Shown here one piece after another: positions 2,724-52,876 of a DNA stretch of 64,000 bases; the first letter of the stretch is position 1, and every line of letters starts with the position of its first letter. A program made the position numbers and the translations under genes. The notes beneath the pieces are model-generated. The model was not told the origin of the DNA. It searched no databases and was given only the letters and a program-made list of their open reading frames with translations. The DNA is taken from positions 124,001 through 188,000 of IMG/VR virus record IMGVR_UViG_3300049846_000628; one strand, given 5' to 3'.

Positions 2724-3314
2724 TTATTCGACATAAAATCCCTTACGAAGATACTCATTATCTTCAATAAAGGTCATATTTTCTACTTTTTCATCATCCC
2801 AAACGGGTATTGCTAAAGAATTTCCATAACGAAAGTCAGGATTTCTTCTAAAATGCACCTCAATCAGGTTTCCATTGATAAATTCACAGTTGATCCACTC
2901 ATAGTTCCCTTTTAAGGACCTTAAAATTTCAAAAAATTCCATTTTTTGATCAACTTTTTCCCATTTTTTCCACTTGTAGTAAGGATCATCTGGATTACGA
3001 GTGCCCAATACAACCAATTCTGCGGTTTGGTTCTTAAAATCTACGCTTAGATGCTCTCCTTCAAAGATCTCACACCAAAACTCAGATGGATGAGCGTGTT
3101 CTATATCATTCTCAATCCATTCTTTACGAGCAAAACGCCCCATCCCAAGTAAATTAAACGATGGGCGCACAATATAAAAGTCGGGCTTGGGAACTGTGGT
3201 GCCCACTGGACCACAAGTATAACCCAAAACCCGACTTAGAAATAACTTATTATAAACCCAGAGGTCTGATGGATGTATGTGATTCCATTCATCATTACCG
3301 TCTAGGTGATACAT
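2724..3314 (-). CDS. Putative ATP-grasp-fold protein
   Basis: YIVRP..NLLGMGRFA, CEIFEGEHLSVDF and INCEF..GNLIEVHFR resemble ATP-grasp motifs in the expected order. Confidence 0.55.
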   Translation of the reverse strand: MYHLDGNDEWNHIHPSDLWVYNKLFLSRVLGYTCGPVGTTVPKPDFYIVRPSFNLLGMGRFARKEWIENDIEHAHPSEFWCEIFEGEHLSVDFKNQTAELVVLGTRNPDDPYYKWKKWEKVDQKMEFFEILRSLKGNYEWINCEFINGNLIEVHFRRNPDFRYGNSLAIPVWDDEKVENMTFIEDNEYLRKGFYVE

Positions 3315-4438: not shown

Positions 4439-4636
4439 TTATGTATGTTCCGTCAAGACAACCTCATCTCCCTCTATTGTAAATCTTATTTGAGTGTCTT
4501 CGTACCAGGACAGTTCATTCATAATCCTTTCGGGAATCACCACATAATACTGCCCAGTGATTGGATCAACTTGTACGGACTCAAAAATATCTCCGGAATT
4601 TTTTTGCATTTCGGTATAATATTCAACCTTTTTCAA
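4439..4636 (-). CDS. Small AbrB/MazE-like DNA-binding protein
   Basis: GQYYVVIPERIMNELSW.EDTQIRFTIEGDEVVL swapped-hairpin pattern. Confidence 0.55.
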   Translation of the reverse strand: MKKVEYYTEMQKNSGDIFESVQVDPITGQYYVVIPERIMNELSWYEDTQIRFTIEGDEVVLTEHT

Positions 4637-4651
4637 GATTATATATTTAAA

Positions 4652-5392
4652 TCAATATTCAATAAGTAAATTCCAAATTTTTGTTTTCTTTCTTCTTGCT
4701 ACTGAAAGATTACTTGCAATTTTATTGATAGGTAATGTTTTATTTTTCATTCGACTGAAAACAAACTCATAATGATCCTTAACCCAACTTCTTAGGTTAT
4801 ATCCTTTCCATACTTGACCAGTTAAAGTATCTGTAATTGTATAAGATTTATGATTTGGTTCGGAGGCATTTTTAAATCTACTGATCCATCTCAAATTTGT
4901 ATAATGATTGTTTAATTTATTTCCATCGATATGATCAATTTCTGCATGATGCTCTGAATTTGGTATAAAAGTCTCTGCAACTAATTGATGAATAGATTTC
5001 TTAATTTGTTTGTAGTTATTGTTTTCATCTCTAATTGAAATGTTGATGCATTCATACCGATGCTCAGGATATCTTGCATGTCCTCTAAATGCTGGTTTGA
5101 GGTAAATTAGTCCATACTCATTTATTTCTCCATATTTTCCAGTTCTATCATACTTACCCGGTCTTCGGTATGCTTTACCATCCTCTGTGATGTAGTATCC
5201 AGGATATTGTGTTTCTTTCATATCCTCAGGTATTTTTACATCAGGGTAATTGTAAGTTACTTTCTGTTTTGGTTTTGCAATCGGAATATTCCATGTTTCT
5301 CTGGGTTTTTTTAAGTAAACCCATTTGCCGTCCTTTTTAATAAATTGATTTCCATGTTTATCTGTTCTGATTGTCCCCTCTGGATATCTCAT
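4652..5392 (-). CDS. HNH homing endonuclease (free-standing)
   Basis: SIHQLVAETFIPN..EIDHIDGNKLNNHYTNLRW; AT-rich. Confidence 0.88.
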   Translation of the reverse strand: MRYPEGTIRTDKHGNQFIKKDGKWVYLKKPRETWNIPIAKPKQKVTYNYPDVKIPEDMKETQYPGYYITEDGKAYRRPGKYDRTGKYGEINEYGLIYLKPAFRGHARYPEHRYECINISIRDENNNYKQIKKSIHQLVAETFIPNSEHHAEIDHIDGNKLNNHYTNLRWISRFKNASEPNHKSYTITDTLTGQVWKGYNLRSWVKDHYEFVFSRMKNKTLPINKIASNLSVARRKKTKIWNLLIEY

Positions 5393-5851: not shown

Positions 5852-6043
5852 TCAATACCCCAGCCAGACCAGAAACTCACCAGCGTCAACCCCGCCGAAG
5901 GCAGCGGTCGTTCCGTAGTCGGTGCGGAAGTCATCCCACAGACCGTGGAGTTTGGCAGCGTATGCCGCTTCGATCCAGAAGATGGTCCCGTTGTCGGGGT
6001 TGGTGATGGAGGCGATCTGACTGGGGAAGCAGGGGTCGGTCAT
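5852..6043 (-). CDS. Early small hypothetical protein
   Basis: 63-aa ORF directly behind promoter at 6066-6095. Confidence 0.75.
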   Translation of the reverse strand: MTDPCFPSQIASITNPDNGTIFWIEAAYAAKLHGLWDDFRTDYGTTAAFGGVDAGEFLVWLGY

Positions 6044-6100
6044 CGGGTGCCTTGCGGTTGAGAGAATTCTACAGGGTCAGGGGGCAGGGCGTCAACCTGC

Positions 6101-6265
6101 TCACCAGAGCAGGTCCGCGATTGACTGCAGGCGCTTGGCACGGGTTGCCAGTTCCTTAAGGATGGCCCGCTCCTCCTTGGCAGTGGGGTTGCCTTCCCAC
6201 AACCACTCCTCCAGTTGGAAGGAGGTCATGTCGTCGAAGGCGGTGGCGATGGTTCCGTCCAGCAC
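6101..6265 (-). CDS. Early small hypothetical protein (54 aa, GTG start)
   Basis: Hand-translated MLDGTIATAFDDMTSFQLEEWLW...ADLLW; GGAG RBS; own promoter. Confidence 0.65.
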   Translation of the reverse strand: MLDGTIATAFDDMTSFQLEEWLWEGNPTAKEERAILKELATRAKRLQSIADLLW

Positions 6266-6336
6266 GGTGCGCTCCGTTGGTTTGCTCTGGAATTCTACAG
6301 GGTCGGGGGCGGGAGGTCAACCCACCCCCTGGCGGA

Positions 6337-6561
6337 TCAGACCGCCACCCAGTAGGACTTGCCGTTGATCTCCTGCTGTTCTGCCATAATGTAGGAGGCA
6401 GATCCCATGCTACCGCGCCAACCCTGAACCTGGAAGTAGCACTCCTCCAGGGAGTCCTGATAGGCAAGGGTGCTGGTGATCTTACCATCCTGCACGTGCG
6501 CCACAGCGTAGGGATAGCGTTCGGGGGAGAGGATGGTCAGCAGAGGGGTGGGGGCGGTCAT
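6337..6561 (-). CDS. Early small hypothetical protein
   Basis: Start reassigned to MTAPTP at 6561 behind TGnTACAAT (6591-6599). Confidence 0.7.
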   Translation of the reverse strand: MTAPTPLLTILSPERYPYAVAHVQDGKITSTLAYQDSLEECYFQVQGWRGSMGSASYIMAEQQEINGKSYWVAV

Positions 6562-6601
6562 CGGTCGGGGGTGTCGGTTGAACTGAGAGTATTGTAGCAG
6601 G

Positions 6602-6826
6602 TCAGCGGCGCTCGGCGTTGAAGTCCTGCAGTCCCTTAAGGATGCCCTCCAGGAAGGCGGTGCCGATGCCCTCCCAGAATTTGGGGTCGCGGACCAGTTC
6701 AGCAATGGCAGCGAACCAGTCAGCAGGGGTCGCCGCGGCCAACTGTTCGCGCTCTGCAGGAGTCAGGTCTGCCATCATCTGATTCCAGTCGTTCAGCAGT
6801 TGGGTTTCCAGGTTCGGGCGGGTCAT
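6602..6826 (-). CDS. Early small hypothetical protein
   Basis: 74-aa ORF behind TGnTACAAT (6849-6857). Confidence 0.75.
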   Translation of the reverse strand: MTRPNLETQLLNDWNQMMADLTPAEREQLAAATPADWFAAIAELVRDPKFWEGIGTAFLEGILKGLQDFNAERR

Positions 6827-6872
6827 CGGGTCCGTTGCGGTTGAGAGTATTGTAGCAGATGGGGCGGACCCC

Positions 6873-7058
6873 TCAGATCATCACAGTGGTGGGCAGTGCC
6901 CGAACGATGGGGGAGTGGTGGCGGTAGCAGAACTCCCGCAGATCGTGGATGCTCTCACCAGCGAAGTCATCAGCGGTAAAGGTCCAACCGTGGAACTCAC
7001 GGTCGATCTCAGTCAGGGTGTGAGCGATCAGGGAGCGGAGGTTCTGAGCGGTAGTCAT
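6873..7058 (-). CDS. Early small hypothetical protein
   Basis: 61-aa ORF behind TATACT at 7081-7086. Confidence 0.72.
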   Translation of the reverse strand: MTTAQNLRSLIAHTLTEIDREFHGWTFTADDFAGESIHDLREFCYRHHSPIVRALPTTVMI

Positions 7059-7129
7059 CGGTTTCGTTTGAACTGAGATCAGTATAAGGGGTTGGGGTGG
7101 GGTCTCCGGAGACCCCGTGTGCCAGTGCC

Positions 7130-7318
7130 TCAGGCGTCCATCCCCATCGCATCCCGCAGGATGTTGTAGGCGTTCAGGTAGTAGTCTGCGTCAGCACCCT
7201 TACCAGCGACGCGGCAATCGACTGCCAGGCAGAGCACGGCGGTGCGGATAGTGCTCCACTGTGCCTCAGTCAGGGTGATGGAGCAGAGGTCGTTGGGGAG
7301 GACGTTGGTGCGGGTCAT
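7130..7318 (-). CDS. Early small hypothetical protein
   Basis: 62 aa; own promoter; stop inside palindrome 7118-7141. Confidence 0.75.
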   Translation of the reverse strand: MTRTNVLPNDLCSITLTEAQWSTIRTAVLCLAVDCRVAGKGADADYYLNAYNILRDAMGMDA

Positions 7319-7388
7319 CGGTCGTTTGCTTCGGTTCCCTCAGTATAGAGGCAAAAGGGAGGGGTCGTCCCCCTCCGTTGTGCCACTA

Positions 7389-7523
7389 TCAGAATTGGAT
7401 TTCTTCGGCGGTCGGCTGGGCATCGGGCATGGTATCATCCTCTGCGATCGTTTCCAGGATCTGCAGGATGCTGTCGCCGTTGCTGCCTTGGCGGAGCAGG
7501 GACATGGCAAGGTCGCGGGTCAT
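7389..7523 (-). CDS. Early small hypothetical protein (44 aa)
   Basis: Hand-translated MTRDLAMSLLRQGSNGDSILQILETIAEDD...EIQF. Confidence 0.6.
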   Translation of the reverse strand: MTRDLAMSLLRQGSNGDSILQILETIAEDDTMPDAQPTAEEIQF

Positions 7524-7581
7524 TTGAGAATCAGAGTAAAGGTTGCTGAGCAGTTTAAAGTCGTGCTCAGGACTGATAGAT

Positions 7582-7833
7582 TCAGGAGTCGAAAACGTCG
7601 CCGTTGATCTCAGCGCGGTTGATCTTAGGGTCGTCCCACTTTACACCGTCAGGGGTTTCTTTGCTGCCGCAATCATAGAATGCTTCCAGAAGTTCTTCAT
7701 AGCAGCAGATGTCATTCTCCTGAATGAAGTTGTAGATGCTTTCATCATTCTCAATCCAGAGCACCACGTTCCAGGTCTCATAATTGGTCCAACCGTTGTA
7801 GGTCTTGGTGGGAGCGGTGAGGGTGGCGGTCAT
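7582..7833 (-). CDS. Early hypothetical protein (YNGWTNYETW motif)
   Basis: YNGWTNYETWNV.LWI.NDE motif seen in many phage proteins; own promoter. Confidence 0.82.
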   Translation of the reverse strand: MTATLTAPTKTYNGWTNYETWNVVLWIENDESIYNFIQENDICCYEELLEAFYDCGSKETPDGVKWDDPKINRAEINGDVFDS

Positions 7834-7905
7834 TGGGGTTCGGTTCGGAACTTGTTTAGTATAGGGGGCGGGAGGTGCCCCCTGGTGGGTCAGTGTGCCA
7901 GTGCC

Positions 7906-8106
7906 TCAGGCGGCACAAGCGGCAGGGGTCAGGGTGACTTCTACGCTACCGTCGATCGCCAGCAGCGCCGCGTCGATGGCATCCAGGCGGGCTTCCACAA
8001 TGGAAGGCGTGAAGTGCTCAGGATGCTTCACTGCCAGACTCAGCAGCTCACCCTTCCAGGAGATCAGGGCAGTGCGGACGGTGGCGGTGGGGAGGGTCGC
8101 GGTCAT
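7906..8106 (-). CDS. Early small hypothetical protein
   Basis: 66 aa; own promoter; stop inside palindrome 7894-7917. Confidence 0.72.
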   Translation of the reverse strand: MTATLPTATVRTALISWKGELLSLAVKHPEHFTPSIVEARLDAIDAALLAIDGSVEVTLTPAACAA

Positions 8107-8139
8107 CGGGGTCGTTTGATCTGAGAGTATTCTACAGGG

Positions 8140-8310
8140 TCAGCGGGTCTGCCCGCAGTAGGAAGGGGACACTTTACAGAGTGCCTCTGCCTGCCGCTCC
8201 TGGTGCGCGTTGATGGTAGCGACTGCCTCCAGTGCCCAGGCACCTGCCACAATGCTCACCATGGCGAAGCACATAATGGCGAGAGAGTTCTGAAAGGAAC
8301 GTTCGGTCAT
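8140..8310 (-). CDS. Early small membrane protein (56 aa)
   Basis: Hand-translated MTERSFQNSLAIMCFAMVSIVAGAWALEAV..., one hydrophobic segment; own promoter. Confidence 0.6.
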   Translation of the reverse strand: MTERSFQNSLAIMCFAMVSIVAGAWALEAVATINAHQERQAEALCKVSPSYCGQTR

Positions 8311-8345
8311 CGGTTCGGTTCGGTTGATGGAATCAGTCTACAGGG

Positions 8346-8513
8346 TCAACGGGAGATGAGGTCGCCTGCAGTGTACAGTGCCTCAGCTGTCACACTGCGA
8401 ATCGGTTGCATCGGACCCCAGAACGTGTAGAGCAGGGCACCGCCGATCAGGAGTTTAATCATGGTAGCACGGTGAAACTCAGGAGAGCGGGAGCGGGTCA
8501 GGGAGCGCATCAT
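8346..8513 (-). CDS. Early small membrane protein (55 aa)
   Basis: Hand-translated MMRSLTRSRSPEFHRATMIKLLIGGALLYTFWG...; ATGA overlap with upstream ORF. Confidence 0.55.
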   Translation of the reverse strand: MMRSLTRSRSPEFHRATMIKLLIGGALLYTFWGPMQPIRSVTAEALYTAGDLISR

Positions 8514-8671
8514 CGCTGCAGTTGGGCAAGGGAGGAAGGGGCGATGTGGGAGGGGGAACCACAGGAGCGGTAGAAGTCTACCATGCGGTCTGCTTCCTCT
8601 TTAGTGGTGAACCACTGCGAGCGCCACTCACAGGCATTGTAGGGGGTCTGGTAGCGGACTTCGAAGCGCAT
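8510..8671 (-). CDS. Early small hypothetical protein (53 aa)
   Basis: Hand-translated MRFEVRYQTPYNACEWRSQWFTTKEEADRMVDFYRSCGSP...; own promoter. Confidence 0.7.
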   Translation of the reverse strand: MRFEVRYQTPYNACEWRSQWFTTKEEADRMVDFYRSCGSPSHIAPSSLAQLQR

Positions 8672-8739
8672 CGGTGTCGTTTGCTGATGGAATCAGTATA
8701 AGGGGCGGGAGGTGCCCCCAGAGAGGTTAGGTTGACGGT

Positions 8740-9495
8740 TCAGTAACTGTCACAACGGGCATTGACTGCCTCCAGAAGTTTTGCCACCTTATCTTGTTGC
8801 AGTTTGAATACAACGGAAGAGTTTTTGTTTGCTTTACTCAGTCCCAGAAATGCCTTAATTCCGTTGTTACTAGTAACGCGAATTCGCAGACCACAATCAT
8901 ACTCCTTCACGCCATCAGTGAACAACAGTCGGCGGGAACCTTTTGCGCGACCTTTGAGAAAAGGAGTGTAACCCTGTTGAATGTAACCAACTGCAGGATG
9001 TTGGTCTGCTTTGTAAGTATGAAGGTTCTTTGCTACAGTATCATTCACAGCGACCATCATTTCGCTGTTAGCATCAATCATCTGAGTTTGAATGAATGAT
9101 GCTAACTGTTCGGCAGTGAAAGAATCAAGAACACCGCTGCACAGATCATTAAAGTCTTTGCGAACTTGCTTCACAAAAGAAACAGCGGAACGCTGAGACT
9201 TGGGCAGTTGGCGGTATTCTTTGATCTGCTCAAGAAAATGGGTGAAAGTATCACCAACTACATCAGAAATCTTAGTTGTGTGAATCCAATCGAACGAACC
9301 ATTCTTTACACCTTGCTTGTGTTTGATGGTCCACTTGATGTTACGCTCAGGATCAAACGCATCCGCTTTGTTCTTCGTTCCACCTTGCAGATAAATGGAG
9401 AGAGAAGCAAGGTCAAAAAAGATTAGAAGATTCTTTGTATCTTCTTCATTCTTGACGCCTTCATAATGAACGCGCCCAGTGTTGTCAAAAGTCAT
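8740..9495 (-). CDS. Hypothetical protein, possible PD-(D/E)xK restriction-like nuclease
   Basis: 251 aa; AGGAG RBS; E...KAD...TIK spacing weakly resembles type II REase active sites. Confidence 0.45.
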   Translation of the reverse strand: MTFDNTGRVHYEGVKNEEDTKNLLIFFDLASLSIYLQGGTKNKADAFDPERNIKWTIKHKQGVKNGSFDWIHTTKISDVVGDTFTHFLEQIKEYRQLPKSQRSAVSFVKQVRKDFNDLCSGVLDSFTAEQLASFIQTQMIDANSEMMVAVNDTVAKNLHTYKADQHPAVGYIQQGYTPFLKGRAKGSRRLLFTDGVKEYDCGLRIRVTSNNGIKAFLGLSKANKNSSVVFKLQQDKVAKLLEAVNARCDSY

Positions 9496-9673
9496 TTAAT
9501 TCTCCTGTGGAATTCCACTAGATGATTTGTGCTCCGTCTTTATGGGGCGCGGAACGTTCCCCTGATGAACACAGAATAGAACGAAACAGGGGGCAGCGCA
9601 AGGGGTTGTGGACGGTTCGGGAAGTGGCACAGGATGCCCTGCTGGGGGCATCTGGGGGCTCTATACTAAGGGC

Positions 9674-9790
9674 ACAAGCGAAGGAGGGGCGGGGTAGCCC
9701 TTAAGACGAAAAAGGTCGCCACTGGGGCAGCTTTGAAATAGTAGAGTGGAAAGTATAAAAAAAGGGAGGCAATCGCCCCCCGATTCTTTA
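9674..9790 (+). ncRNA. Candidate small RNA from bidirectional palindrome promoter
   Basis: Plus-strand TATACT (9662-9667) 31 bp from palindrome 9608-9631; no credible ORF; several short stems; ends at a hairpin. Confidence 0.55.
9757..9790. terminator. Intrinsic terminator, probably bidirectional
   Basis: GGGAGGC-AATC-GCCCCCC hairpin with A7 on one side and TTCTTT on the other. Confidence 0.7.
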
Positions 9791-10135
9791 TGCGAACATA
9801 AAACCATTGCGGAACTCATACTCATTGTAGACAGGAGAAGTTCCTGCCTGTCCAACGAACTTGTGAACGAACCAATTCCAGTTCCGCTGGAATACACATT
9901 CACCACCACATCCGTGATCGTGAAGAATAGCATTCAGGCGGGACTTGGTAGTGTTAGACTGATACCCACCGTCAAAGATTTGCACGAAGTCATCACCAAC
10001 CGTGGCGATGTGATTGCCGTAAAGATACACTTTGGATTCGTTAGTTTCAGGATCGAAAGTAACTTTAGTGTTATCTTTCTGCCAGTTCTGATTGTTCAGA
10101 ATGGCGGCGTTCATTTCGCGTTCAATCTTACGCAT
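9788..10135 (-). CDS. Early hypothetical protein
   Basis: MRKIEREMNAAI...VYLYGNHIA...TTKSRLNAIL, recognisable cyanophage early-region family. Confidence 0.85.
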   Translation of the reverse strand: MRKIEREMNAAILNNQNWQKDNTKVTFDPETNESKVYLYGNHIATVGDDFVQIFDGGYQSNTTKSRLNAILHDHGCGGECVFQRNWNWFVHKFVGQAGTSPVYNEYEFRNGFMFA

Positions 10136-11178: not shown

Positions 11179-12605
11179 TCAGGTGTCCTCAGAGTGAAGA
11201 ATGTCTAGCATTTGCTGGTGATAGTTGTCAGCATCACGAACCACATTTGCTGCCTCAGATACATCTTCAATTTCATACTGTGTCATCTCCAGAGAGTGAA
11301 TCACATTGGAGAGAAGATCAGTCAGTGCCTCAATCTTTTGTGCGTCAGTCATACATTCTCATCTCCCATATCAAGAGAACAATTGCTGTAACCTTCATCG
11401 TATCCCCTGTCATAACCTTCATCATACATTGCTCGGGCAAAGTTTAAGATTTGTAGAGTATCTGCCTTCCAACAAATATCCTCCCACTTTTCAAAAGTTA
11501 GATAATTTTCAGCAAGTTGTAGGATTTGTTCTTCAGTCATCATCAAACCTCTTCACGCATTTTGAGAAGTGCTCTACGAAGTTCGCCACCTTCATAAGCA
11601 AGAAGACCTGTAGTTTCAATCATATTATACCATCCTTCATCTTGATGATACTCAATCAGGGCAATTAGAGCGTCAATTTGTGTGGTTGTCAGAGTGGTTT
11701 TTTTGTCAGTCATTTGAGTGCGTTTTGTCCGATTGTGTGCTGAACCATTCTCACTGCCATACGAAAGTTTCCAAAGTCCATAGTTTTGTCTTCTTCACAA
11801 AAATCCTCAAAAATCTTTTTGATTTGTTCGTCAGTGATTTGTGCGTTAGTCATCAGGGGTGCCTCTCAACTGAAACTAAGATAACAGGGGGTCACGGTCT
11901 CCCGCAACCCCCCGTGTGCCACTAGGTCAACTGTCACCCTCCAGCAGTTCGGGATAGTATTGATTAACCTCTTCGGTCAATTCTTCGTCCGAATACTTAT
12001 CATAACCCTCCATCAGATAATCATAACAGAGACAAGTCATAGTTTTGAGATCCATGTCATCCAGCATTTGCTGAACCATTTGATCTTGAAGGTCTTTGCG
12101 GTTCATTTCAGGAAGTGTAAAGTGCGTGATGATACTGTTGCTGAAGACGGGAAAGAATGTCAGTCCAGAACTCTACATCCTCATCGTCATTGTACTGATT
12201 GTTTTCTTCAACCAAACGAATCAGATTGTTGAGATCGTCAGCAGTGAGATAGTTCATCAGTAATCGTAGTTTGCGTTCAGGTACTCATTCACATCGAACT
12301 TCTCATCATCACGAAGTTCGGGAATGTCCATGTCAAAGATCTCACCAGGAGCATCCTGAATCTCAGACCACATCTCATCAAACATTGGTGAATCCCTCAG
12401 GAACGAATGTAATGTAGAACGGATTGGGGGGCATTGCAACCCCCCTTGTACCAGTTACTCAAGCGGCACAAGCAACGAATTCTTGAATATAATAATCCAA
12501 GGGCAATTCAAGGCGGTTAGCCTCACTTTCCCATTCTGCCCATTCTTGCTCCGAAGCATCATTAATGAAGTCTTCGAAAGTATACTCAAAAGCAGGACCG
12601 CACAT
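11179..12605 (-). other. Run of small early ORFs (e.g. 11179-11352, 11349-11546, ORF ending 11927, 12257-12385, 12459-12605)
   Basis: Tightly packed, mostly acidic ORFs with overlapping start/stop codons, punctuated by palindrome promoters. Confidence 0.7.
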
Positions 12606-12765
12606 AATCTTTTCGGGGTCAATTGCGACGACTTGAGTAACATAACCGATATCCGCCCCCAGCACAAGGGGGTATGTGCCAGTTTCAGAACTGTCCCATA
12701 TAACGACACTGTTATATCGTTTTATAATGATATAACGAGAGTCCAGTTATTCAAGTGTCACATTA

Positions 12766-12951
12766 TCAGAAGGGATCGATTTCCTTCGTGGTAGCATACA
12801 CTTCCTCATCACCTTCGAGTTCCAGTAACTCTTTCCAGTCCATATGTTCTACATCTAGATCATCATAACACATGATGTCTAGATTAACACGTACAAGGCG
12901 TTTCTGTACTAACATGGCGTCTAGATGTGTATGTGTACTAGATTGTATCAT
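12766..12951 (-). CDS. Small acidic hypothetical protein
   Basis: ORF track; ATGA overlap with 12948-13088. Confidence 0.6.
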   Translation of the reverse strand: MIQSSTHTHLDAMLVQKRLVRVNLDIMCYDDLDVEHMDWKELLELEGDEEVYATTKEIDPF

Positions 12952-13249
12952 GCATAATGACGATACGCAAGATCTTGATAATCATGCGCGTCTCGTGCAT
13001 AGTCCTCGTCGAGATCCTGTGTATAATACTCGTCGAGATCCGCGTAATCGTTTGTGTATGTATAGTCGAGATCGTAGTCGTCGTACATAGCTCGTCGAGA
13101 TTGTGTGACTAGATGATTATAGCATGAATCTAGACTAGATGCAAGAACTAGATTTGGGGTCTAGACTAGATTATGATAATATATATGAGTTCTCGACTAG
13201 ATTTGTGTTGATATGATAATATAATGCTATTGTGATATCTCGACTAGAT
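12855..13249 (+). repeat. Cluster of about 15 same-strand C[T/G]AGAT motifs; long form CT[C/A]G[T/A]C[G/T]AGAT
   Basis: Long copies at 13005, 13029, 13091, 13130, 13161, 13192, 13239; short copies at 12855, 12879, 12921, 12938, 13067, 13109, 13148. Confidence 0.85.
12948..13088 (-). CDS. Asp/Tyr-rich peptide (46 aa)
   Basis: Hand-translated MYDDYDLDYTYTNDYADLDEYYTQDLDEDYARDAHDYQDLAYRHYA; promoter TTGCAT-N17-TATAAT at 13144-13116. Confidence 0.6.
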   Translation of the reverse strand: MYDDYDLDYTYTNDYADLDEYYTQDLDEDYARDAHDYQDLAYRHYA

Positions 13250-13292
13250 TTTATGAGAATTGTGTGCGTCTTGTGACCTTCTGCGCGGGGGG

Positions 13293-13321
13293 TTGACTTT
13301 GAGAGCTTCGTGTGTTATAAT
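13293..13321 (+). promoter_or_regulatory. Near-consensus sigma70 promoter facing the tandem array
   Basis: TTGACT-N17-TATAAT with extended -10 TG; opposite to all neighbouring genes. Confidence 0.85.
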
Positions 13322-13348
13322 GCGCTCGCTAAGCTTGCATAAGGATCA

Positions 13349-13524
13349 GACATTTATAAGGTTTTAATGGGGTCTTTATAAGGTCTTTATAAGGTCTTTA
13401 TAAGGTCTTTATAAGGTCTTTATAAGGTCTTTATAAGGTCTTTATAAGGTCTTTATAAGGTCTTTATAAGGTTTTAATGGGGTTTTTATAAGGTTTTAAT
13501 GGGGTTTTAATGAGGTATTAAACA
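13349..13524. repeat. 11-bp tandem array
   Basis: Nine perfect GGTCTTTATAA (13371-13469) flanked in phase by GGTTTTAATGG-type variants. Confidence 0.98.
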
Positions 13525-13626
13525 GATAATATAAGCATATAACACTAACATTATACAACCGAATAAAAAACAATAATATATTTTTTAATATATTTTTTAA
13601 TTGATTTTAACCTTTTTTATTGATTT

Positions 13627-13797
13627 TTATGCCTTTTGGAGGTTAGAAAGTTCGTGTTCTGCTCTTCTTTCTAACTCTCCGTGTACGTGTCTACGTTGTT
13701 GACGACTCGCAATCGCATTCTGTCTAGCACGGAACATTGAGAGTGAAGTTTGTGGAGCAGAAGGAATCTGTTCCATAAATTGTTGAAACGTTTTCAT
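13627..13797 (-). CDS. Small late protein with MKTFQQF N-terminus
   Basis: Hand-translated 56 aa; ATAAATA late promoter near 13824-13830; N-terminus resembles T4-like internal head protein signals. Confidence 0.65.
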   Translation of the reverse strand: MKTFQQFMEQIPSAPQTSLSMFRARQNAIASRQQRRHVHGELERRAEHELSNLQKA

Positions 13798-13905
13798 TCT
13801 CTATATAAGGACTGTATTGATCCTATTTATTTCTACAAGACAGGGATGATCTCACTATGAACATATCCTTGTTGTTGAATATGTTTCTCCCATAGAGTAG
13901 CATCT

Positions 13906-16407
13906 TCAATCGTATAGAAAGTTGCGATTTGTTTTGATTGTTTGTTCTTCTTGTTTTTGAGATAGATTACTTGGTAATTCATACTGATAAATGATAATTG
14001 GTTTTGAATCATTCCAATGTCTGACTACACCTGCAATGATGAATCCATTGGTAATCAAATAGGAGAGAAAGATGACCGTTCGTATGATCGCAATAGTATC
14101 AGACTCTTTATCACACTTGGATGCTTTCTCTCCTAATGCTTTTGCCCACCATCTCCATACTGTCTTATTCTTCATAGATTGATTGCCTTGTTCGGATGTA
14201 CGTTAACTCTTTCCATTGATTCGCATAACACAAGACTAATAACCTTTCATTTTTATGAAGACGACAGGCTTCGTAGTTAATCTCATCTTTTGGTTTTGTT
14301 GCGACCTCGATTGTAATATACTGCTTATCAACGAAGTATATCCATCCTTCTACACCTTTAGTCCACGTTACATAATCATTTACCTTGGGAACATACATTG
14401 CTCTAATGGAGTTAGATTTGGAATCATTGCAGAATAAGGTGTTGTATCATCAATACTCACACGCTTACCCACTGTCTTACTATTGACTGGGGAGAAGTAT
14501 TCTTTTGTTTTTGAATTGTAGAATCCCCAGATACAACGAACATCCCCACCAAGATTGTAGTCAAACTTACGATGATGTAGAATCCAGATTGCAACAATAT
14601 TACGTTTGAATGACTCAGTTTCATAACTATAACCTTGAGGTGCTTTGTGGGGGAATTCAGGAATCACGGACTGCACGGAGACGATTTGGATTATAACCTA
14701 AAGCAAGATATTGTTGAAGACGTGCATCACATTGCTCTTTGGTTAATTGCTTCGCATCCTCTTCAATCAATGCCCAACCATCCGTGTAAAATTCTTCAAT
14801 GCGATAGAGTTGATTCACGTTGTAAATGCCTCCAGAAGACCAGATCCAAATTCATCTACCAGTGCGAACTTTTGTGCATTGACCACTCTTTCCATAATGC
14901 GATCAGTATACCGATCATCAAAAGACTGTTCGTTAGAAAGAATCTCAAATGCTTCAGTATCAGACTCAGCAATTAGATTAATCAGACCACCGTATTCAGA
15001 AGAAGGAAACGGCACCCAGTAATCAACAATGTACAGATATTTCATCGTTTGTGTTTTAGGACTCCTTCATTTTAGATTGTTTGTGAGCATTTGTCAAGCA
15101 GCTGAGTTGTCTCTCAATCTCATACTTAATCGGCAGTAGATGAGAAGAAAAGAATCCAGCATACTCTCCATCTTGTAGCAAACTGTAGATGTTCTCAGTT
15201 TGCATTAATGCAAAATTTAACTTCATTCTCCGATCCATCATACAAACTCCTGAATATAATACTCAACCGATACATCAAGTTTTTTGGCTTGCTTCTCATA
15301 AAAACGTTTCGTGTATTGTTTTGCTTCACCCCATTGCTGATAAGAATGAATCTCCATCTCAGAGTGCTTCATAAAATCTTCAAAAGCATTCATAAATTGT
15401 TTGATGTCTTCGTCGTTCATTAGTCTACAGGGCAATGAGGATGATCACTGGATTTAACACAAGCATCATAAGACTTCATCAGTTTAGCATCACGCTCAAT
15501 TAGAAATACATTCCAACCGATCATCAATCCAAACAGAATCAAGAAAACATAAGGGAACTTCATCAGCAGGCACCTTGCATAACGTTGTACTCTTGTACCA
15601 GATCAATGTTATCACCAGTGATCAGATAATCCAGCGCCAGACGCTCATCAATCTCACGCTGAGCATCCTTTTTGCTGATGCACTTGCGGGAGATGGTATC
15701 CACACCCTTCCAAGAAAGAACCTTGAGAGTGTAGTTGGAACAATCAGCAATCGGATAGAAACCAACCAGCATCGTGCCGTCTTTGGACTGGAGAGTGGGG
15801 AAGTCAATCATTGGGGGGCATCCCGATTACCTTTGTATTATAGGTCAGAAGGACGGCACCACGTCGTTGCGGAGGACAGTTCCGGATCTGTCCATTCGCT
15901 CAAAGACCGTGTAAAGTTTGTTATACAGTGCAGGAACACTTCCATATTCCCGTGCGATTTGATATTCATCACGAAGGTCTAAGGTCTGCAATGCAGATAG
16001 AATTACACCAATTTCGTGAACATTCAGTTGTAAAGTCGTTTCAGTCATTGTTATCAGTCCCAAGAAACATTTTCAAGAAGAACACCAGGCATTACATAAG
16101 TCCAGCCAGTTCCACCAGGTTTGTAATCCCATTTGTATTCATATTTGTTATGACTATCCCAAGTCATATATCCTTTCTCTTTATCAAACCTACCCTTAAT
16201 GGTCAGAGCAAATCTGTTAGAGAAGATATTGCGAGTACGAAGCGCACCGCTCTTTTCACGAGTTTCAATCACAACACAAGTATCCTCATAGAATTCAGTA
16301 CCAGACTCAATTCCACAGGCAGTTTCATAACGAAACGGACGATAGGCATCTTGTGCAAGTGCAGGAGACGCAAGAAGGAAAAAAGAAAGAAAAATAGATT
16401 TCATCAT
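13906..16407 (-). other. Run of small hypothetical ORFs (13906-14175, 14165-14398, 14380-14676, 14815-15045, 15056-15241, 15238-15435, 15563-15811, 15845-16063, 16054-16407)
   Basis: Co-oriented, abutting ORFs from the track. Confidence 0.75.
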
Positions 16408-31547: not shown

Positions 31548-32783
31548 TCAGCGTTTTACAACACTGATGGCGGGCTGACCCTGCTCGAACACGGTGTCCA
31601 CCACCGCCTGCACCTTTTTAGCGGTGCTGATGCCCACAGAAGAGTACACAGGGATGCAGACCAGTCCAAAGGACTTGGTGTAGTCTCCAAGGGCACCAGG
31701 GGCAATCCTGCCGCTCCTGAGCGCCTCTGCGTCGTCCTTGTGCAGGCGGATCACGCGCCCGATGGTCTGAGAGATCCCGATGTAGTCCATAGAGCGCATA
31801 AACAGCACCGCTTCCAGACCAGAAACGTTGATTCCCTCAGAGAGAATGCTGTGGTGAAGCACAACGAATTTCTTGTCGTTGTCCTTACCCCAGGCACTCA
31901 GGGTATCAAAGAAAACCTCACGGTTAACCTTCTGACCATCAATCACGGCACCAGTCTTAGAAGTAATATACATCCAAGAGAAACCACGATCCTCCAGTTG
32001 CTTGCAGAAATCAGTCTGGGAAACCAGATTCTGAATCTGTTTGGTTGCCTTGGAGCAAACAAGAACCTTGCCCACTTCCTGAGCATCAATAGTCTGAATC
32101 AGGTTCTCACAGTCAACATCAGCAACGATCTGACCCTTAGAGAGCATCTCAAACTGCTGCACCACAACCTTAGGAGGAACGATGAAACCACCCTCCACCA
32201 GTTCGGGAGCGGGAACGTTGCAGATGACCTGCCCGTAGACAGCACCATCGTTCATCCCAGGTTTGGAAATAGTAGCAGAATGCTTAGGAGTAGCAGTGAA
32301 GAAATAGCAGCGGTCAGCAGTAGCAGCAAAGTGCTCGGTTGCTGGAAAAAAGTTACGCTGAACCGAATTGTGCGCTTCATCAAAGTAAATGGTGTTGACG
32401 TGAATATCTGCCTGCTGAAGACGTTGCAGGGAGTTGTAGGTGGTAAAGATTAGTTTGTTGCCGCGAGTTTGATCGACCCAGTTACGGATCTCATTCGGGC
32501 GAGTCGTGCTTTGGTGATGCGTTTCACCACTGTGGACGTGCAGCACCTGAGCATTGGTGATAAACTCAAGATACTCAGAAGACAGTTGCTCGGCAAGCAG
32601 AATGCGGGGAGCAACAACTACAATCGTCTGAGGAGTCTCTTTCAGAAACTCACGCATTGCATCACAGATGCCCACAAGGGTCTTACCACCACCAGTAGGG
32701 ATAATCACTTGACCCTTCAGGTACTTAGCAAGGGCGTCAAGGGCACGTTGCTGGTGAGGTCGGAGTTGAATCACAGGTCCCAT
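31548..32783 (-). CDS. SF2 DEAD/DEAH-box (ResIII-like) helicase
   Basis: LRPHQ, PTGGGKT, DEAH, TATP, LSEGINV, QTIGRVIR. Confidence 0.92.
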   Translation of the reverse strand: MGPVIQLRPHQQRALDALAKYLKGQVIIPTGGGKTLVGICDAMREFLKETPQTIVVVAPRILLAEQLSSEYLEFITNAQVLHVHSGETHHQSTTRPNEIRNWVDQTRGNKLIFTTYNSLQRLQQADIHVNTIYFDEAHNSVQRNFFPATEHFAATADRCYFFTATPKHSATISKPGMNDGAVYGQVICNVPAPELVEGGFIVPPKVVVQQFEMLSKGQIVADVDCENLIQTIDAQEVGKVLVCSKATKQIQNLVSQTDFCKQLEDRGFSWMYITSKTGAVIDGQKVNREVFFDTLSAWGKDNDKKFVVLHHSILSEGINVSGLEAVLFMRSMDYIGISQTIGRVIRLHKDDAEALRSGRIAPGALGDYTKSFGLVCIPVYSSVGISTAKKVQAVVDTVFEQGQPAISVVKR

Positions 32784-41324: not shown

Positions 41325-41357
41325 AGGGATTTTCCCATATCTCTTATTTATTTTAAG

Positions 41358-41439
41358 TAGGGCGAGCGGGACTTGAACCCGCAAGGCTTGCGCCACCGGT
41401 TTTTAAGACCGGAATGTTTACCGATTTCATCACCGCCCC
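41358..41439 (-). tRNA. tRNA-Leu(TAA)
   Basis: GGGGCGG/TCGCCCT acceptor, CCGGT-CTTAAAA-ACCGG anticodon arm, long V arm, GCGGG-TTCAAGT-CCCGC. Confidence 0.95.
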
Positions 41440-41452
41440 GTGATGTGAGACC

Positions 41453-41481
41453 ATTATAACTCTTTGAGTCTGAATGGTCAA
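41453..41481 (-). promoter_or_regulatory. Sigma70 promoter for tRNA-Leu
   Basis: TTGACC-N17-TATAAT. Confidence 0.8.
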
Positions 41482-41482
41482 G

Positions 41483-41555
41483 TGCTCCTTGCGTGGATCG
41501 AACACGCCTCAGGCGAATTATGAGTTCGCTGCATTCACCAGATTGCTAAAGGAGC
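41483..41555 (-). tRNA. tRNA with CAT anticodon (elongator Met or Ile2)
   Basis: GCTCCTT/AAGGAGC acceptor, GCGAA-CTCATAA-TTCGC, GCGTG-TTCGATC-CACGC. Confidence 0.93.
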
Positions 41556-41559
41556 AAGG

Positions 41560-41647
41560 TACGAGTGCCTGGATTCGAACCAGGTCAAAGCCGCTAATCT
41601 GGCGGAAAGAGTTTATAAGACTCCTCTGACTACCAAGTCTCACTCGC
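41560..41647 (-). tRNA. Non-canonical tRNA-Ile(TAT) with long variable arm
   Basis: GCGAGTG/CACTCGT acceptor, GGAGT-CTTATAA-ACTCT, CCGC/GCGG V arm, CCTGG-TTCGAAT-CCAGG. Confidence 0.85.
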
Positions 41648-51572: not shown

Positions 51573-52367
51573 TTATTCAATGATGGTTGGGATTACAGAT
51601 CCAGCAGGAGTATAAGTTCTTCTTACACCAGGCTCATTTCCAAGAGATTGTCCCGTTCTGGGAATAAGACGATCTTGATTTTCATTTGGAAGTTGCGGAA
51701 TTGTTGGATCAAGATTAAATCCATCACCATTGAAGATGTTTATACTCATTGCTCTACCAGCAATATAACGATCATATCGGAAAGATATTGAAACTTTTAG
51801 AACATCAGATTGAACATACGAAATTTGTGGAGAACTCATCGCTACTGGCCAAAGACCAATAAAACGATATTCAATCTCAGCATTATAATCCCTATCAAAC
51901 TTAATAATTCTAGTATAGTTTGACTTATAGTATTCTGGATATTGCATCCTCGCAAAATATCCATAGTTAGCCTGACTAACCGATCCTGCTACACCATCAA
52001 TTGGATTATAAGATCCACTAGCAATAAACTCCATCCAAGACTCTATGAATTTCAAAGTTTTATAATTACTATCAACATAAAACTGTAAATCTATCTCATT
52101 GTAAAGTCTAGCAACAGCAAAGTTCTCTTGGACTCCAGTAAAGTTTCCATCAACTTGTTTTGAACTAAATGTAGATGTTGGTAAAGATGCATTAAAACAC
52201 AATAGTCCAGCATCCTCACCAATAAAGAGTGGAGAAATACCCTTGCGACTCACATAATTTCTCAATTCAACAGGCAATCCACCAAACAATACTTGATAGT
52301 GTGATGTTTGGGCTAGATTTGTAAATAGGGGTTTAATATCCGATATTTTACGGGGTTTTGCAGGCAC
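51573..52367 (-). CDS. Tail tube-like baseplate initiator (gp54-like)
   Basis: ASLP..ARLYNEIDLQFYVD..YPEYYK..GLWP; gp19/gp54 pattern and synteny. Confidence 0.65.
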   Translation of the reverse strand: MPAKPRKISDIKPLFTNLAQTSHYQVLFGGLPVELRNYVSRKGISPLFIGEDAGLLCFNASLPTSTFSSKQVDGNFTGVQENFAVARLYNEIDLQFYVDSNYKTLKFIESWMEFIASGSYNPIDGVAGSVSQANYGYFARMQYPEYYKSNYTRIIKFDRDYNAEIEYRFIGLWPVAMSSPQISYVQSDVLKVSISFRYDRYIAGRAMSINIFNGDGFNLDPTIPQLPNENQDRLIPRTGQSLGNEPGVRRTYTPAGSVIPTIIE

Positions 52368-52407: not shown

Positions 52408-52842
52408 ATGGCTTCTTACAAAGGAAAATATAAACCATCTTACCCACAAAAATATAAAGGAGATCCAACAAACATTGTATACAGATCTTTGTGGGAAAGA
52501 AAATTTATGGTTTATTGTGATACGAATCAAAAAATATTAGAATGGGGTAGTGAAGAGATGTATGTCTGGTATAAATCCCCCATTGATGGAAAACCTCATC
52601 GTTATTTTCCAGATTTCTACATTAAAGTCCAAGAAGGAAATGGAAGTATAAAAAAATATTTAATTGAAATCAAACCTCAGAAGCAAACTGTCCCCCCACC
52701 CAAACCACAAAGACAAACTAAAAGATACATTAGTGAAGTCTATGAGTATGCTAAAAACCAATCAAAATGGGAAGCTGCAAGAGAATGGTGTGCTGATCGT
52801 GGATATGAATTTAAAGTAATTACTGAGAATGAATTATTTTAA
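52408..52842 (+). CDS. gp4: Head completion nuclease gp4
   Basis: KYKGDPTNIVYRSLWERKFM, HRYFPDF, IEIKP, NQSKWEAA. Confidence 0.93.
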   Translation: MASYKGKYKPSYPQKYKGDPTNIVYRSLWERKFMVYCDTNQKILEWGSEEMYVWYKSPIDGKPHRYFPDFYIKVQEGNGSIKKYLIEIKPQKQTVPPPKPQRQTKRYISEVYEYAKNQSKWEAAREWCADRGYEFKVITENELF

Positions 52843-52876
52843 TTATAAATAATAGTATATTATTAAAATATAAAAA

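What the first reader, a model, noticed from the sequence alone, without database searches (positions are those of the whole stretch)
12855..13249. Strand-biased CTAGAT/CGAGAT repeat field that also encodes an acidic peptide
Seen: about 15 copies in 400 bp, all on the plus strand, between divergent sigma70 promoters; one lies in the spacer of the leftward promoter, and the field runs into two ORFs, where its complement GATCTCGACGAG encodes the DLDE repeats of a 46-aa Asp/Tyr peptide. Inference: iterons or oriented loading sites for an initiator, helicase or terminase; the peptide may be a by-product or a DNA mimic.
Basis: partly seen in the sequence, partly recalled or inferred. Interest (0 to 1): 0.6.

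Follow-up and report, generated by a model that had tools for sequence, protein, structure and literature searches.

The report
Cyanophage operator array beside origin-like element
The repeat field is real: it is a cluster of short palindromic protein-binding sites on an early promoter, running into two small genes, and it belongs to a conserved, apparently undescribed control and origin-like module of T4-like cyanophages, including P-SSM2.

Summary
There are 17 CTAGAT/CGAGAT hexamers in 397 bp against 0.15 expected, and no other span of the 211-kb phage genome holds more than 2.

The sites are 9-13-bp palindromes, (A)TCTMG-N-CKAGA(T), so the strand bias lies only in the flanking AT.

The field belongs to a module found in at least 483 IMG/VR viral contigs and in cyanophages S-SRM01, S-T4, S-SKS1 and P-SSM2:
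- a leftward promoter P_L with one site filling its -35/-10 spacer and another abutting the start codon of the acidic peptide gene (ORF-B);
- more helically phased sites upstream and inside ORF-B and ORF-A;
- a divergent, highly conserved promoter P_R firing through direct repeats into the most AT-rich 120 bp of the genome.

ORF-B is a real protein under purifying selection. Codon choice at its DLD(E) sites is fixed to fit the DNA motif, so the DNA sites are selected in their own right.

Best reading: an operator array for a dimeric regulator that represses P_L, next to an R-loop-type origin-like element. The best candidate binder is a 56-aa AbrB/MazE-fold protein in the same leftward gene run. 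It is present in 11 of 11 module-bearing genomes. Binding is inferred, not shown.

The parts
12853..13249 (.). Repeat field: 17 CKAGAT/ATCTMG hexamers forming 8 full or near-full palindromic sites plus isolated half-sites.
13128..13140 (.). Perfect 13-bp palindrome filling the P_L -35/-10 spacer. This is the operator position, conserved in 86 of 110 distinct related loci.
13091..13101 (.). Site in the 5' leader, 2 nt before the ORF-B start codon. This position is conserved across loci.
13159..13249 (.). Three further full sites between P_L and P_R (13159-13171, 13190-13202, 13237-13249), centres 31, 31 and 47 bp apart.
13005..13072 (.). Three coding copies inside ORF-B (13005-13015, 13029-13039, 13062-13072), read on the minus strand as D-L-D(-E).
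12853..12943 (.). Half-sites inside ORF-A and at the ORF-A/ORF-B junction (12853-12860 as an 8-bp palindrome, 12879, 12921, 12938).
13116..13144 (-). P_L, the leftward sigma70-type promoter (TTGCAT-17-TATAAT) of the ORF-B/ORF-A early gene run.
12948..13088 (-). ORF-B, a 46-aa acidic Asp/Tyr protein. It is conserved (invariant C-terminal LAYRHYA) and its stop overlaps the ORF-A start.
12766..12951 (-). ORF-A, a 61-aa acidic protein (phrog_12516) with a predicted beta-ribbon homodimer. It is separable from the field.
13293..13321 (+). P_R, the rightward promoter (TTGACT-17-TG-TATAAT) with a G-run upstream and a conserved leader.
13353..13521 (+). About 14 tandem 11-bp direct repeats (unit TTTATAAGGTC) transcribed from P_R. 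Related loci carry other TTTATAAG-type repeats here.
13505..13624 (.). The AT-richest 120 bp of the whole genome (15.8% GC). It is a candidate DNA unwinding element downstream of P_R and includes the box at 13536-13558 shared with other loci.
4439..4609 (-). 56-aa SpoVT/AbrB/MazE-fold protein, the candidate binder, on the same strand 8.4 kb downstream of P_L.

Best explanation
The field is an array of helically phased, palindromic binding sites (core CTMG-N-CKAG, usually flanked to give ATCTMG-N-CKAGAT) for a dimeric sequence-specific DNA-binding protein. It works as an operator array on the early promoter P_L.

Shown:
- One site fills the P_L spacer and another abuts the ORF-B start codon.
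- Further sites extend upstream toward the divergent promoter P_R and downstream into the ORF-B and ORF-A coding sequences, where codon choice is held to the motif.
- The motif is confined to this locus, plus one or two intergenic regions within 5 kb in some relatives.

Inferred:
- Occupation of the array shuts off or autoregulates P_L.
- Because the array reaches P_R, it may also gate P_R. P_R fires through direct repeats into the genome's AT-richest DNA, an arrangement like the promoter-plus-unwinding-element origins of T4.
- The most likely binder is the 56-aa AbrB/MazE-fold protein at window 4439-4609 on the minus strand. It is encoded in the same leftward gene run and co-occurs with the module.
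For: Enrichment and uniqueness:
- 17 hexamers against 0.15 expected. The 11-mer occurs only here in 211 kb.

A conserved module:
- An IMG/VR scan for two CTCGTCGAGAT copies 8-38 bp apart found at least 119 contigs.
- A motif-independent scan with an ORF-A alignment found 483 contigs. In the best 80, 78 have ORF-B next door.
- The same layout is seen in S-SRM01, S-T4, S-SKS1 and P-SSM2.

Operator geometry:
- A P_L-like promoter is present in 100 of 110 distinct loci.
- The 9-mer sits inside the spacer, abutting the -35, in 86 of them. A second site lies just before the ORF-B ATG.
- Spacing between adjacent sites peaks at 21-24, 31-32, 42 and 62-66 bp, which are whole helical turns.

DNA-level selection inside the genes:
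- In 24 distinct ORF-B sequences from loci not chosen by the motif, Leu in D-L-D/E is CTC 52, CTA 14, CTT 2 and never TTA, TTG or CTG.
- The conserved Leu of LAYRHYA is CTT 19, CTA 3, CTC 2. Other Leu codons in ORF-A use all six codons.
- Two ORF-A homologues without a field encode the same DLD with TTA or CTT, not CTA.
- In L124 the coding copy follows the lineage's AGCT variant (DLDE becomes ELDE). In L177 the coding copies are flipped, like the non-coding ones.

Locus restriction in other genomes.

Candidate binder:
- In a screen of all G000 ORFs against 4 module-positive and 3 module-negative genomes, only three coding-strand ORFs were 4/4 positive and 0/3 negative. One is this protein.
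- Pfam PF04014 is matched by 11 of 20 family members, best E 9.7e-5, below the curated cut-off.
- The AF2 model has pLDDT 84.7. Its top Foldseek hits are MazE (1ub4_C, TM 0.72, probability 1.00, E 0.08), the AbrB N-domain, SpoVT and DNA-bound VapB.
- It is present in 11 of 11 module-bearing genomes or long contigs, but in only 17 phage records, against 419 that hold the helicase used as a marker of cyanomyophage records.
- In Sf-CH8 it lies about 600 bp downstream of a minimal P_L/P_R module that carries a single CTAGAT site.
Against: - No binding was measured. The binder is inferred from fold and co-occurrence only.
- The AbrB-like protein is acidic (3 Lys/Arg against 11 Asp/Glu by my count of the translation) and lacks the arginines used by AbrB and MazE at the aligned positions.
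- Its co-occurrence may reflect shared inheritance of a syntenic block.
- S-CAM7 and Sf-CH8 carry homologues with no array, or with a single site.
- The flank of the motif varies by lineage (AGAT, AGCT, AGTT, or lone ATCTCGT half-sites). I did not show matching changes in any protein.
- In the secondary clusters of other phages I could not find a consistent promoter geometry.
- No expression data could be obtained.
Confidence: 0.5

Rival explanations
1. Replication-origin iterons. The field is the initiator-binding part of a phage origin. P_R supplies an R-loop primer or opens the adjacent AT-rich element, and the small genes are origin accessory genes, as repEA and repEB are at T4 oriE. This is compatible with the operator reading and could hold together with it.
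For: - P_R is highly conserved and unique per genome.
- It points into the AT-richest 120 bp of the 211-kb genome. The same holds in 42 of 59 related loci against 6.6% expected.
- Between P_R and the AT-rich DNA lie direct repeats and box cassettes. In 13 of 90 distinct loci these are two or more same-oriented TnnTCCACA boxes, several of them TTTTCCACA or TTATCCACA, the DnaA-box form.
- The motif is confined to one locus per genome.
- An HNH homing endonuclease is inserted in the module in L124 and L139.
- The detrended cumulative GC skew peaks at the module.
- T4 oriF and oriG consist of a promoter plus a downstream unwinding element. T4 oriE has iterons and depends on an early promoter (PMC3016281), and carries two tiny early genes of 45 and 50 aa.
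- A UvsW-like helicase is present at 31548-32783.
Against: - The palindromic sites lie on the opposite side of P_R from the AT-rich DNA, and their best-conserved positions are promoter-operator positions.
- No Rep-like initiator gene was found nearby.
- The window's own module has no DnaA box.
- Close relatives (S-SCSM1, S-SM2, Bellamy) lack the whole module, so it cannot be a universal origin.
- The GC-skew peak is confounded by a GC-rich island just upstream.
Confidence: 0.25
2. By-product of a peptide repeat. The DNA repeats exist only because ORF-B needs DLDE repeats, as the T4 oriE 'iterons' coincide with the beta-helix repeats of gp5.
For: - Four copies encode D-L-D(-E) in ORF-B.
- In T4 the 24-bp-period oriE repeats lie in the gene 5 region that encodes its repeated V-x-G octapeptides. 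[quoted passage not shown]
Against: - At least 5 full sites and several half-sites are non-coding.
- They occupy conserved promoter and leader positions in about 100 loci.
- Secondary clusters in other phages are wholly intergenic.
- Leu codons at the DLD sites are restricted to the two that fit the motif.
- P-SSM2 keeps the field with a much diverged ORF-B.
Confidence: 0.03
3. Recombination or mobility signal. The repeats are hot spots or boundary sequences that shuffle early-gene cassettes, or targets of a homing nuclease.
For: - Secondary clusters sit at boundaries between small-gene cassettes.
- The module is patchily distributed among related phages.
- HNH genes lie in or near it.
- The downstream box cassettes are modular.
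Against: - The helical phasing and fixed promoter positions are not expected of mere recombination sequences.
- The HNH insertion is seen in only two loci.
Confidence: 0.07
4. Packaging (pac) or partition-type centromere array bound by a terminase small subunit or a ParB/ParR-like protein.
For: - It is a single local array of about 15 phased sites, partly inside a gene. In P1 the pac site also lies inside a gene (my own knowledge, not checked here).
Against: - No terminase, ParA or ParB gene was found among the neighbouring genes scanned.
- T4-type phages package by headful without a fixed pac site (general knowledge).
Confidence: 0.04

Closest known systems
Autoregulated operators of AbrB/MazE/VapB(AbrB-type) swapped-hairpin regulators
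   Same: - Palindromic sites overlap the promoter of the gene run that encodes a small AbrB-fold protein.
- The fold match is to MazE, the AbrB N-domain, SpoVT and DNA-bound VapB.
   Different: - There are about 15 sites spread over 400 bp and into coding DNA.
- The gene is 3-8 kb from the operator in most genomes.
- No toxin partner was seen.
- The protein is acidic.
- Binding is untested.
T4 oriF/oriG (promoter plus downstream unwinding element, R-loop priming)
   Same: - A strong promoter fires into an AT-rich element 180-300 bp downstream.
- The genome is T4-like and has a UvsW-type helicase (PMC3016281).
   Different: - The promoter here is sigma70-type rather than MotA-dependent.
- Direct repeats and box cassettes lie in between.
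- A palindromic site array lies upstream.
- There is no functional evidence.
T4 oriE with repEA/repEB and 12-nt 'iterons'
   Same: - An early promoter, two tiny early genes (45 and 50 aa against 46 and 61 aa here) and repeats that overlap coding DNA.
   Different: - RepEA and RepEB show no evident sequence likeness to ORF-A and ORF-B by eye; no alignment was run.
- The T4 repeats are direct and coincide with a peptide repeat of gp5.
- Here the repeats are palindromic, mostly non-coding, and constrained at the DNA level.
Iteron plasmid origins (F oriS/repE, P1 oriR, pSC101)
   Same: - An inverted-repeat operator sits on a promoter next to direct repeats, DnaA boxes (in some lineages) and AT-rich DNA.
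   Different: - No Rep initiator gene was found.
- The direct repeats vary between lineages and show no clear likeness to the operator half-site, except in L177.
Omega/CopG/ParG ribbon-helix-helix repeat arrays
   Same: - Many short sites in mixed orientation lie upstream of a promoter.
- ORF-A is predicted to form a dimer through an antiparallel beta-ribbon.
   Different: - The ORF-A model has no helix-helix part and no PDB fold match.
- ORF-A occurs without the field (DSL-LC03, L204) and the field occurs without ORF-A (P-SSM2).

Membership tests
Operator array of an autoregulated AbrB/MazE-fold regulator | Palindromic or repeated sites overlapping the promoter | tested here: met
   A 13-bp palindrome lies in the P_L spacer. 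The same position is kept in 86 of 110 loci.
Operator array of an autoregulated AbrB/MazE-fold regulator | Regulator with a swapped-hairpin AbrB/MazE fold encoded in the controlled gene run | tested here: met
   Window 4439-4609 on the minus strand. Foldseek top hits are MazE, AbrB and SpoVT (TM 0.6-0.73, E 0.08-0.5). Sub-threshold PF04014 matches in 11 of 20 relatives. Same strand downstream of P_L, and about 600 bp downstream in Sf-CH8.
Operator array of an autoregulated AbrB/MazE-fold regulator | The protein binds these sites | not testable with these tools
   Only co-occurrence is available (11 of 11 module-bearing genomes). The acidic composition is a caution.
T4 oriF/oriG-type R-loop origin | [quoted passage not shown] | tested here: met
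   P_R matches 11 of 12. The AT-richest 120 bp of the genome is at 13505-13624. The same arrangement holds in 42 of 59 loci.
T4 oriF/oriG-type R-loop origin | A persistent R-loop that primes replication | not testable with these tools
   No reads or replication data.
Iteron-type origin (plasmid-like) | Direct repeats next to DnaA boxes and AT-rich DNA | tested here: inconclusive
   Direct repeats and AT-rich DNA are present in the window. DnaA-type boxes are found in only 13 of 90 related loci and not in the window.
Iteron-type origin (plasmid-like) | Adjacent gene for a Rep initiator | tested here: not met
   Neighbouring ORFs have no Rep-like family hits.
Ribbon-helix-helix repeat-binding system with ORF-A as binder | RHH fold, and obligate pairing of protein and sites | tested here: not met
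   The model has no helix pair and no PDB match. ORF-A and the field occur separately. The ORF-A N-terminus does not change with motif variants.
Rfam RNA families | Match to a curated covariance model | tested here: not met
   No meaningful hit in 12000-14500 at E up to 1, nor in the whole window at gathering score apart from tRNAs.

The most novel reading that the evidence does not exclude
The module is the lytic replication origin and control hub of a widespread subset of T4-like cyanophages, including P-SSM2. On this reading, an AbrB-fold protein bound to a phased palindrome array, partly written into protein-coding DNA, times both early transcription from P_L and R-loop priming from P_R into an unwinding element. 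Some lineages would also recruit host DnaA through TTTTCCACA boxes.
Probability: 0.25. Interest if true: 0.8.

Novelty: new variant of a known kind. Interest (0 to 1): 0.62.

Why it matters
- How T4-like cyanophages start replication and switch off early genes is largely unknown. They lack MotA and AsiA, and only a skew-based origin prediction exists for Syn9 (PMC2984593).
- This module gives a concrete, conserved and experimentally tractable locus, present in the model phage P-SSM2 and in hundreds of environmental contigs. It offers defined sites, two promoters and a candidate regulator.
- It is also a clear case of transcription-factor-type sites imposed on codon choice inside a small gene.
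- My searches of the held paper library found no description of it. Most subscription-journal papers are not held, so this is not proof of novelty.

Tried and rejected
- Megablast of the region against phage records found nothing. Blastn gave the first relatives.
- Rfam gave no family.
- ORF-A as the binder is rejected:
  - It looked RHH-like by sequence, and a homodimer is supported by the model (ipSAE 0.55 against a best control of 0.00; three runs agree in at least 92% of contacts; partner pLDDT 70; the mark was reached by 20 of 30 solved pairs and 1 of 23 single chains, with counts only rough because my own alignment was used).
  - The fold has no PDB match.
  - Its N-terminus does not vary with motif variants.
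  - It occurs without the field, and the field occurs without it.
- Conserved neighbours were scanned for DNA-binding domains. None was found apart from the AbrB-like protein.
- Protein Atlas look-ups returned only 'hypothetical protein'.
- Raw GC skew is uninformative because nearly all genes are on one strand. The detrended peak at the module is weak evidence.
- I looked for a consistent -35/-10 geometry in the secondary clusters and found none.
- I tried to read Doron et al. 2016 on Syn9 promoters and Vaiskunaite et al. 1999 on repEA and repEB. Neither is held.

Full report
**What is there**

The window is part of a 211,201-bp single-contig virus record. Several features mark it as a T4-like cyanophage:
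- a UvsW-type helicase with best hits in S-SCSM1 and S-SKS1;
- gp25, Kyano_Gp96 and DUF6267.

Almost all genes lie on the minus strand.

At 12853-13249 the hexamers CTAGAT/CGAGAT occur 17 times (14 on +, 3 on -). The rest of the genome predicts 0.15, and no other 397-bp span has more than 2. The 11-mer CTMGNCKAGAT occurs 7 times in the genome, all of them here.

**Anatomy**

Reading the sequence shows that the unit is not a hexamer. It is an inverted repeat, (A)TCTMG-N-CKAGA(T). Examples are the perfect 13-mer at 13128-13140 and near-perfect copies at 13159-13171, 13190-13202 and 13237-13249.

At the 4-base core the two strands are equal (16 vs 18).

The field lies between two divergent promoters:
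- P_L (minus strand): -35 TTGCAT at 13139-13144, a 17-nt spacer, and -10 TATAAT at 13116-13121.
- P_R (plus strand): 13293-13321, 11 of 12 matches plus an extended -10 TG.

The 13-mer fills the P_L spacer. Another site (13091-13101) ends 2 nt before the ORF-B start codon. Three more sites lie inside ORF-B, where the minus strand reads D-L-D(-E). Half-sites continue into ORF-A.

Downstream of P_R come:
- a conserved leader;
- about 14 tandem 11-bp repeats at 13353-13521;
- a box shared with other loci;
- the AT-richest 120 bp of the entire genome at 13505-13624, 15.8% GC.

**Relatives**

Blastn found the same layout in Synechococcus phages S-SRM01, S-T4 and S-SKS1.

Among 134 clusters in these loci:
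- 100 have an ORF-B homologue, and 78 have both ORF-A and ORF-B in the same geometry;
- 75 have the P_R promoter at the expected distance.

A scan that does not depend on the DNA motif (ORF-A alignment A1) found 483 contigs. In the best 80, 78 have ORF-B adjacent.

P-SSM2 also carries the module. It has the P_R leader, 16 hexamers, P_L with the site in its spacer and a diverged ORF-B (PSSM2_098), but no ORF-A.

**Is the DNA motif or the peptide selected?**

Both are.

ORF-B is a genuine protein:
- 84 distinct sequences were found.
- The indels are in-frame.
- The ends are invariant (MYDDY at the start, LAYRHYA at the end).
- pN/pS is 0.22 in the C-terminal non-motif codons and 0.40 over all non-motif codons.

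The DNA sites are constrained independently of the protein:
- In 24 distinct ORF-B sequences from loci not selected by the motif, Leu within D-L-D/E is CTC 52, CTA 14, CTT 2. These are essentially the two codons allowed by the K position of CKAG.
- The conserved Leu of LAYRHYA is CTT 19, CTA 3, CTC 2.
- Other Leu residues of ORF-A use all six codons.
- Two ORF-A homologues in phages without a field (DSL-LC03 and L204) encode the same DLD with TTA or CTT instead of the CTA (CTAGAT) used next to fields.
- Synonymous diversity is lower at motif codons (pS 0.43 against 0.59). This set was partly chosen by the motif.
- Lineages differ in the flank (AGAT, AGCT, AGTT, or lone ATCTCGT half-sites). In L124 and L177 the coding copies follow the lineage's variant, changing the peptide from DLDE to ELDE or to other residues. 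In L182 they do not.

It fails on both counts.

**Operator geometry**

In 110 distinct loci, 100 have a P_L-like promoter within 60 nt of the ORF-B ATG. In 86 of these the 9-mer core lies in the spacer, directly after the -35 hexamer. A second site sits immediately before the ATG.

Distances between neighbouring sites peak at 21-24, 31-32, 42 and 62-66 bp. These are whole helical turns, so the sites face one side of the helix. The loci are related, so the P-values from that test are inflated.

These are the positions expected of repressor operators bound cooperatively.

**Locus restriction**

| Genome | Where the motif occurs |
|---|---|
| 205-kb IMG/VR genome (G001) | all nine 11-mers within 2 kb |
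| S-SRM01 | the module plus two clusters 2.5 and 5 kb away |
| P-SSM2 | one cluster |
| S-T4 record | the module twice, about 171.6 kb apart; probably terminal redundancy of the record |
| S-SCSM1, S-SM2, Bellamy (no module) | 0-3 scattered 9-mers, fewer than a reversed control pattern |

These three module-less relatives also lack a P_R-type element, apart from one probably chance match in S-SCSM1. The motif is therefore not a genome-wide regulon signal. It is a property of this module.

**Who binds?**

The local small proteins (ORF-B, ORF-A and the 60-aa ORF at 12257-12439) are all strongly acidic.

ORF-A looked like a ribbon-helix-helix protein by sequence. Evidence for a dimer:
- The complex model supports a homodimer through an antiparallel ribbon of residues 19-27.
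- ipSAE is 0.55 against a best control of 0.00.
- The runs agree in at least 92% of contacts, and partner pLDDT is 70.
- The mark was reached by 20 of 30 solved pairs and 1 of 23 single chains. These counts are rough because my own alignment was used.

Evidence against ORF-A as the binder:
- It has no fold or sequence match in the PDB.
- It does not co-vary with the motif.
- It is separable from the field in both directions.

I therefore screened all G000 ORFs against four module-positive genomes (G001, S-SKS1, S-SRM01, S-T4) and three module-negative ones (S-SCSM1, S-SM2, Bellamy). Three coding-strand ORFs were present in all positives and in no negative:
- a 75-aa ORF far away;
- a tail protein (phrog_3269);
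- window 4439-4636.

The conserved core of the last one (56 aa, 4439-4609) has these properties:
- It matches Pfam MazE_antitoxin/SpoVT-AbrB below threshold in 11 of 20 relatives, best E 9.7e-5.
- It folds with pLDDT 84.7.
- Its best structural matches are MazE (TM 0.72), the AbrB N-domain, SpoVT and DNA-bound VapB. Foldseek E-values are only 0.08-0.5, as is usual for a domain this small.
- The S-SRM01 homologue is annotated as a DNA-binding domain protein.
- The protein is found in 11 of 11 module-bearing genomes or long contigs. It is always on the P_L strand, 2-8.5 kb downstream of the nearest site.
- Only 17 phage records hold it, against 419 that hold the helicase.
- In Sf-CH8 a minimal module (P_R leader, AT-rich DNA, and one CTAGAT next to the P_L -10) lies about 600 bp upstream of the gene.

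Cautions:
- The protein is acidic.
- S-CAM7 has a distant homologue without any array.
- The co-occurrence could be shared synteny rather than function.

**The right half**

P_R and its leader are among the best-conserved non-coding sequences in the loci. Between P_R and the AT-rich DNA the loci carry interchangeable cassettes. Among 90 distinct loci:
- 44 have ATTCTCAA-type boxes;
- 14 have the ATAACACTA-type box that the window has;
- 13 have two or more same-oriented TnnTCCACA boxes, including TTATCCACA in S-SKS1 and TTTTCCACA in L023.

In 42 of 59 loci the locus-wide AT-richest 120 bp lies 60-600 bp downstream of P_R, against 6.6% expected.

This matches the promoter-plus-unwinding-element design of T4 oriF and oriG. 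The review of T4 replication also notes iterons and dependence on an early promoter at oriE (PMC3016281). In T4 itself, repEB (45 aa) and repEA (50 aa) lie at oriE, and the 24-bp-period repeats fall in the part of gene 5 that encodes the gp5 beta-helix repeats. That is a useful contrast. In T4 the DNA repeat may follow the peptide. Here the peptide follows the DNA.

**Verdict**

The field is a selected array of palindromic protein-binding sites. Its most probable function is an operator array repressing or autoregulating P_L (confidence about 0.5), probably through the AbrB-fold protein (about 0.3 for that identity).

A role as origin iterons, or as a gate on a P_R-primed origin, is compatible and is given about 0.25. 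Peptide by-product, pac or centromere, and recombination-signal readings are unlikely.

I found no description of the module in the held literature. I rate it a new variant of a known kind, with interest 0.62.

Noticed in passing
window 6000-10000: A GC-rich island (51-59% GC against about 38% elsewhere) with positive GC skew lies inside the early small-gene region. It contains a DUF7249 ORF (7582-7833) and a 251-aa ORF (8740-9495). Its origin was not examined.
   Followed up: no
window 4652-5392 (-); L124 and L139 between the field and P_R: An HNH endonuclease gene sits directly upstream of the AbrB-like gene. In two related contigs a different HNH-type ORF is inserted inside the module itself, between the repeat field and P_R.
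   Followed up: partly
window about 52808-52930: This is the second AT-richest stretch of the genome (16.7% GC over 120 bp), at the junction of divergent gene blocks (51573-52367 on the minus strand, 52877-53536 on the plus strand). It could be another regulatory or origin-like region.
   Followed up: no
window 41357-41647 (-): A cluster of three tRNA genes (Leu-TAA, Met-CAT, Ile-TAT).
   Followed up: no
L002 / S-T4 record positions 2748-2935 and 174317-174504: The whole module appears twice in the S-T4 GenBank record with identical internal spacing, about 171.6 kb apart. This is probably a terminal redundancy kept in the linear record.
   Followed up: partly
L207 2903-3070 (T4 gene 5, near oriE): The T4 oriE 'iterons' form a 24-bp-period repeat that lies in the gp5 region encoding its repeated V-x-G octapeptides. 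They may therefore reflect a peptide repeat rather than initiator sites.
   Followed up: partly
S-SCSM1, S-SM2 and Bellamy whole records: The 9-mer palindrome CTMGNCKAG is rarer than its reversed control in the module-less relatives (3 vs 13, 1 vs 8, 0 vs 5 per strand). This suggests general avoidance of these CTAG/CTCG palindromes.
   Followed up: no
L003 3700-3760 (S-SKS1); L023, L051, L174, L190 downstream of P_R: Arrays of two or three same-oriented DnaA-box-like 9-mers (TTATCCACA or TTTTCCACA) lie between the P_R repeats and the AT-rich DNA in some lineages only. This hints at recruitment of host DnaA.
   Followed up: partly
window 12766-12951 (-): ORF-A is predicted to form a homodimer through an intermolecular antiparallel beta-ribbon (residues 19-27), with an acidic C-terminal half. 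Its function is unknown, and it also occurs in phages without the field.
   Followed up: partly
L177 about 3040-3180: In the lineage that uses lone ATCTCGT half-sites, the same heptamer also recurs inside the tandem repeats downstream of P_R. This links the two halves of the module in that lineage.
   Followed up: no
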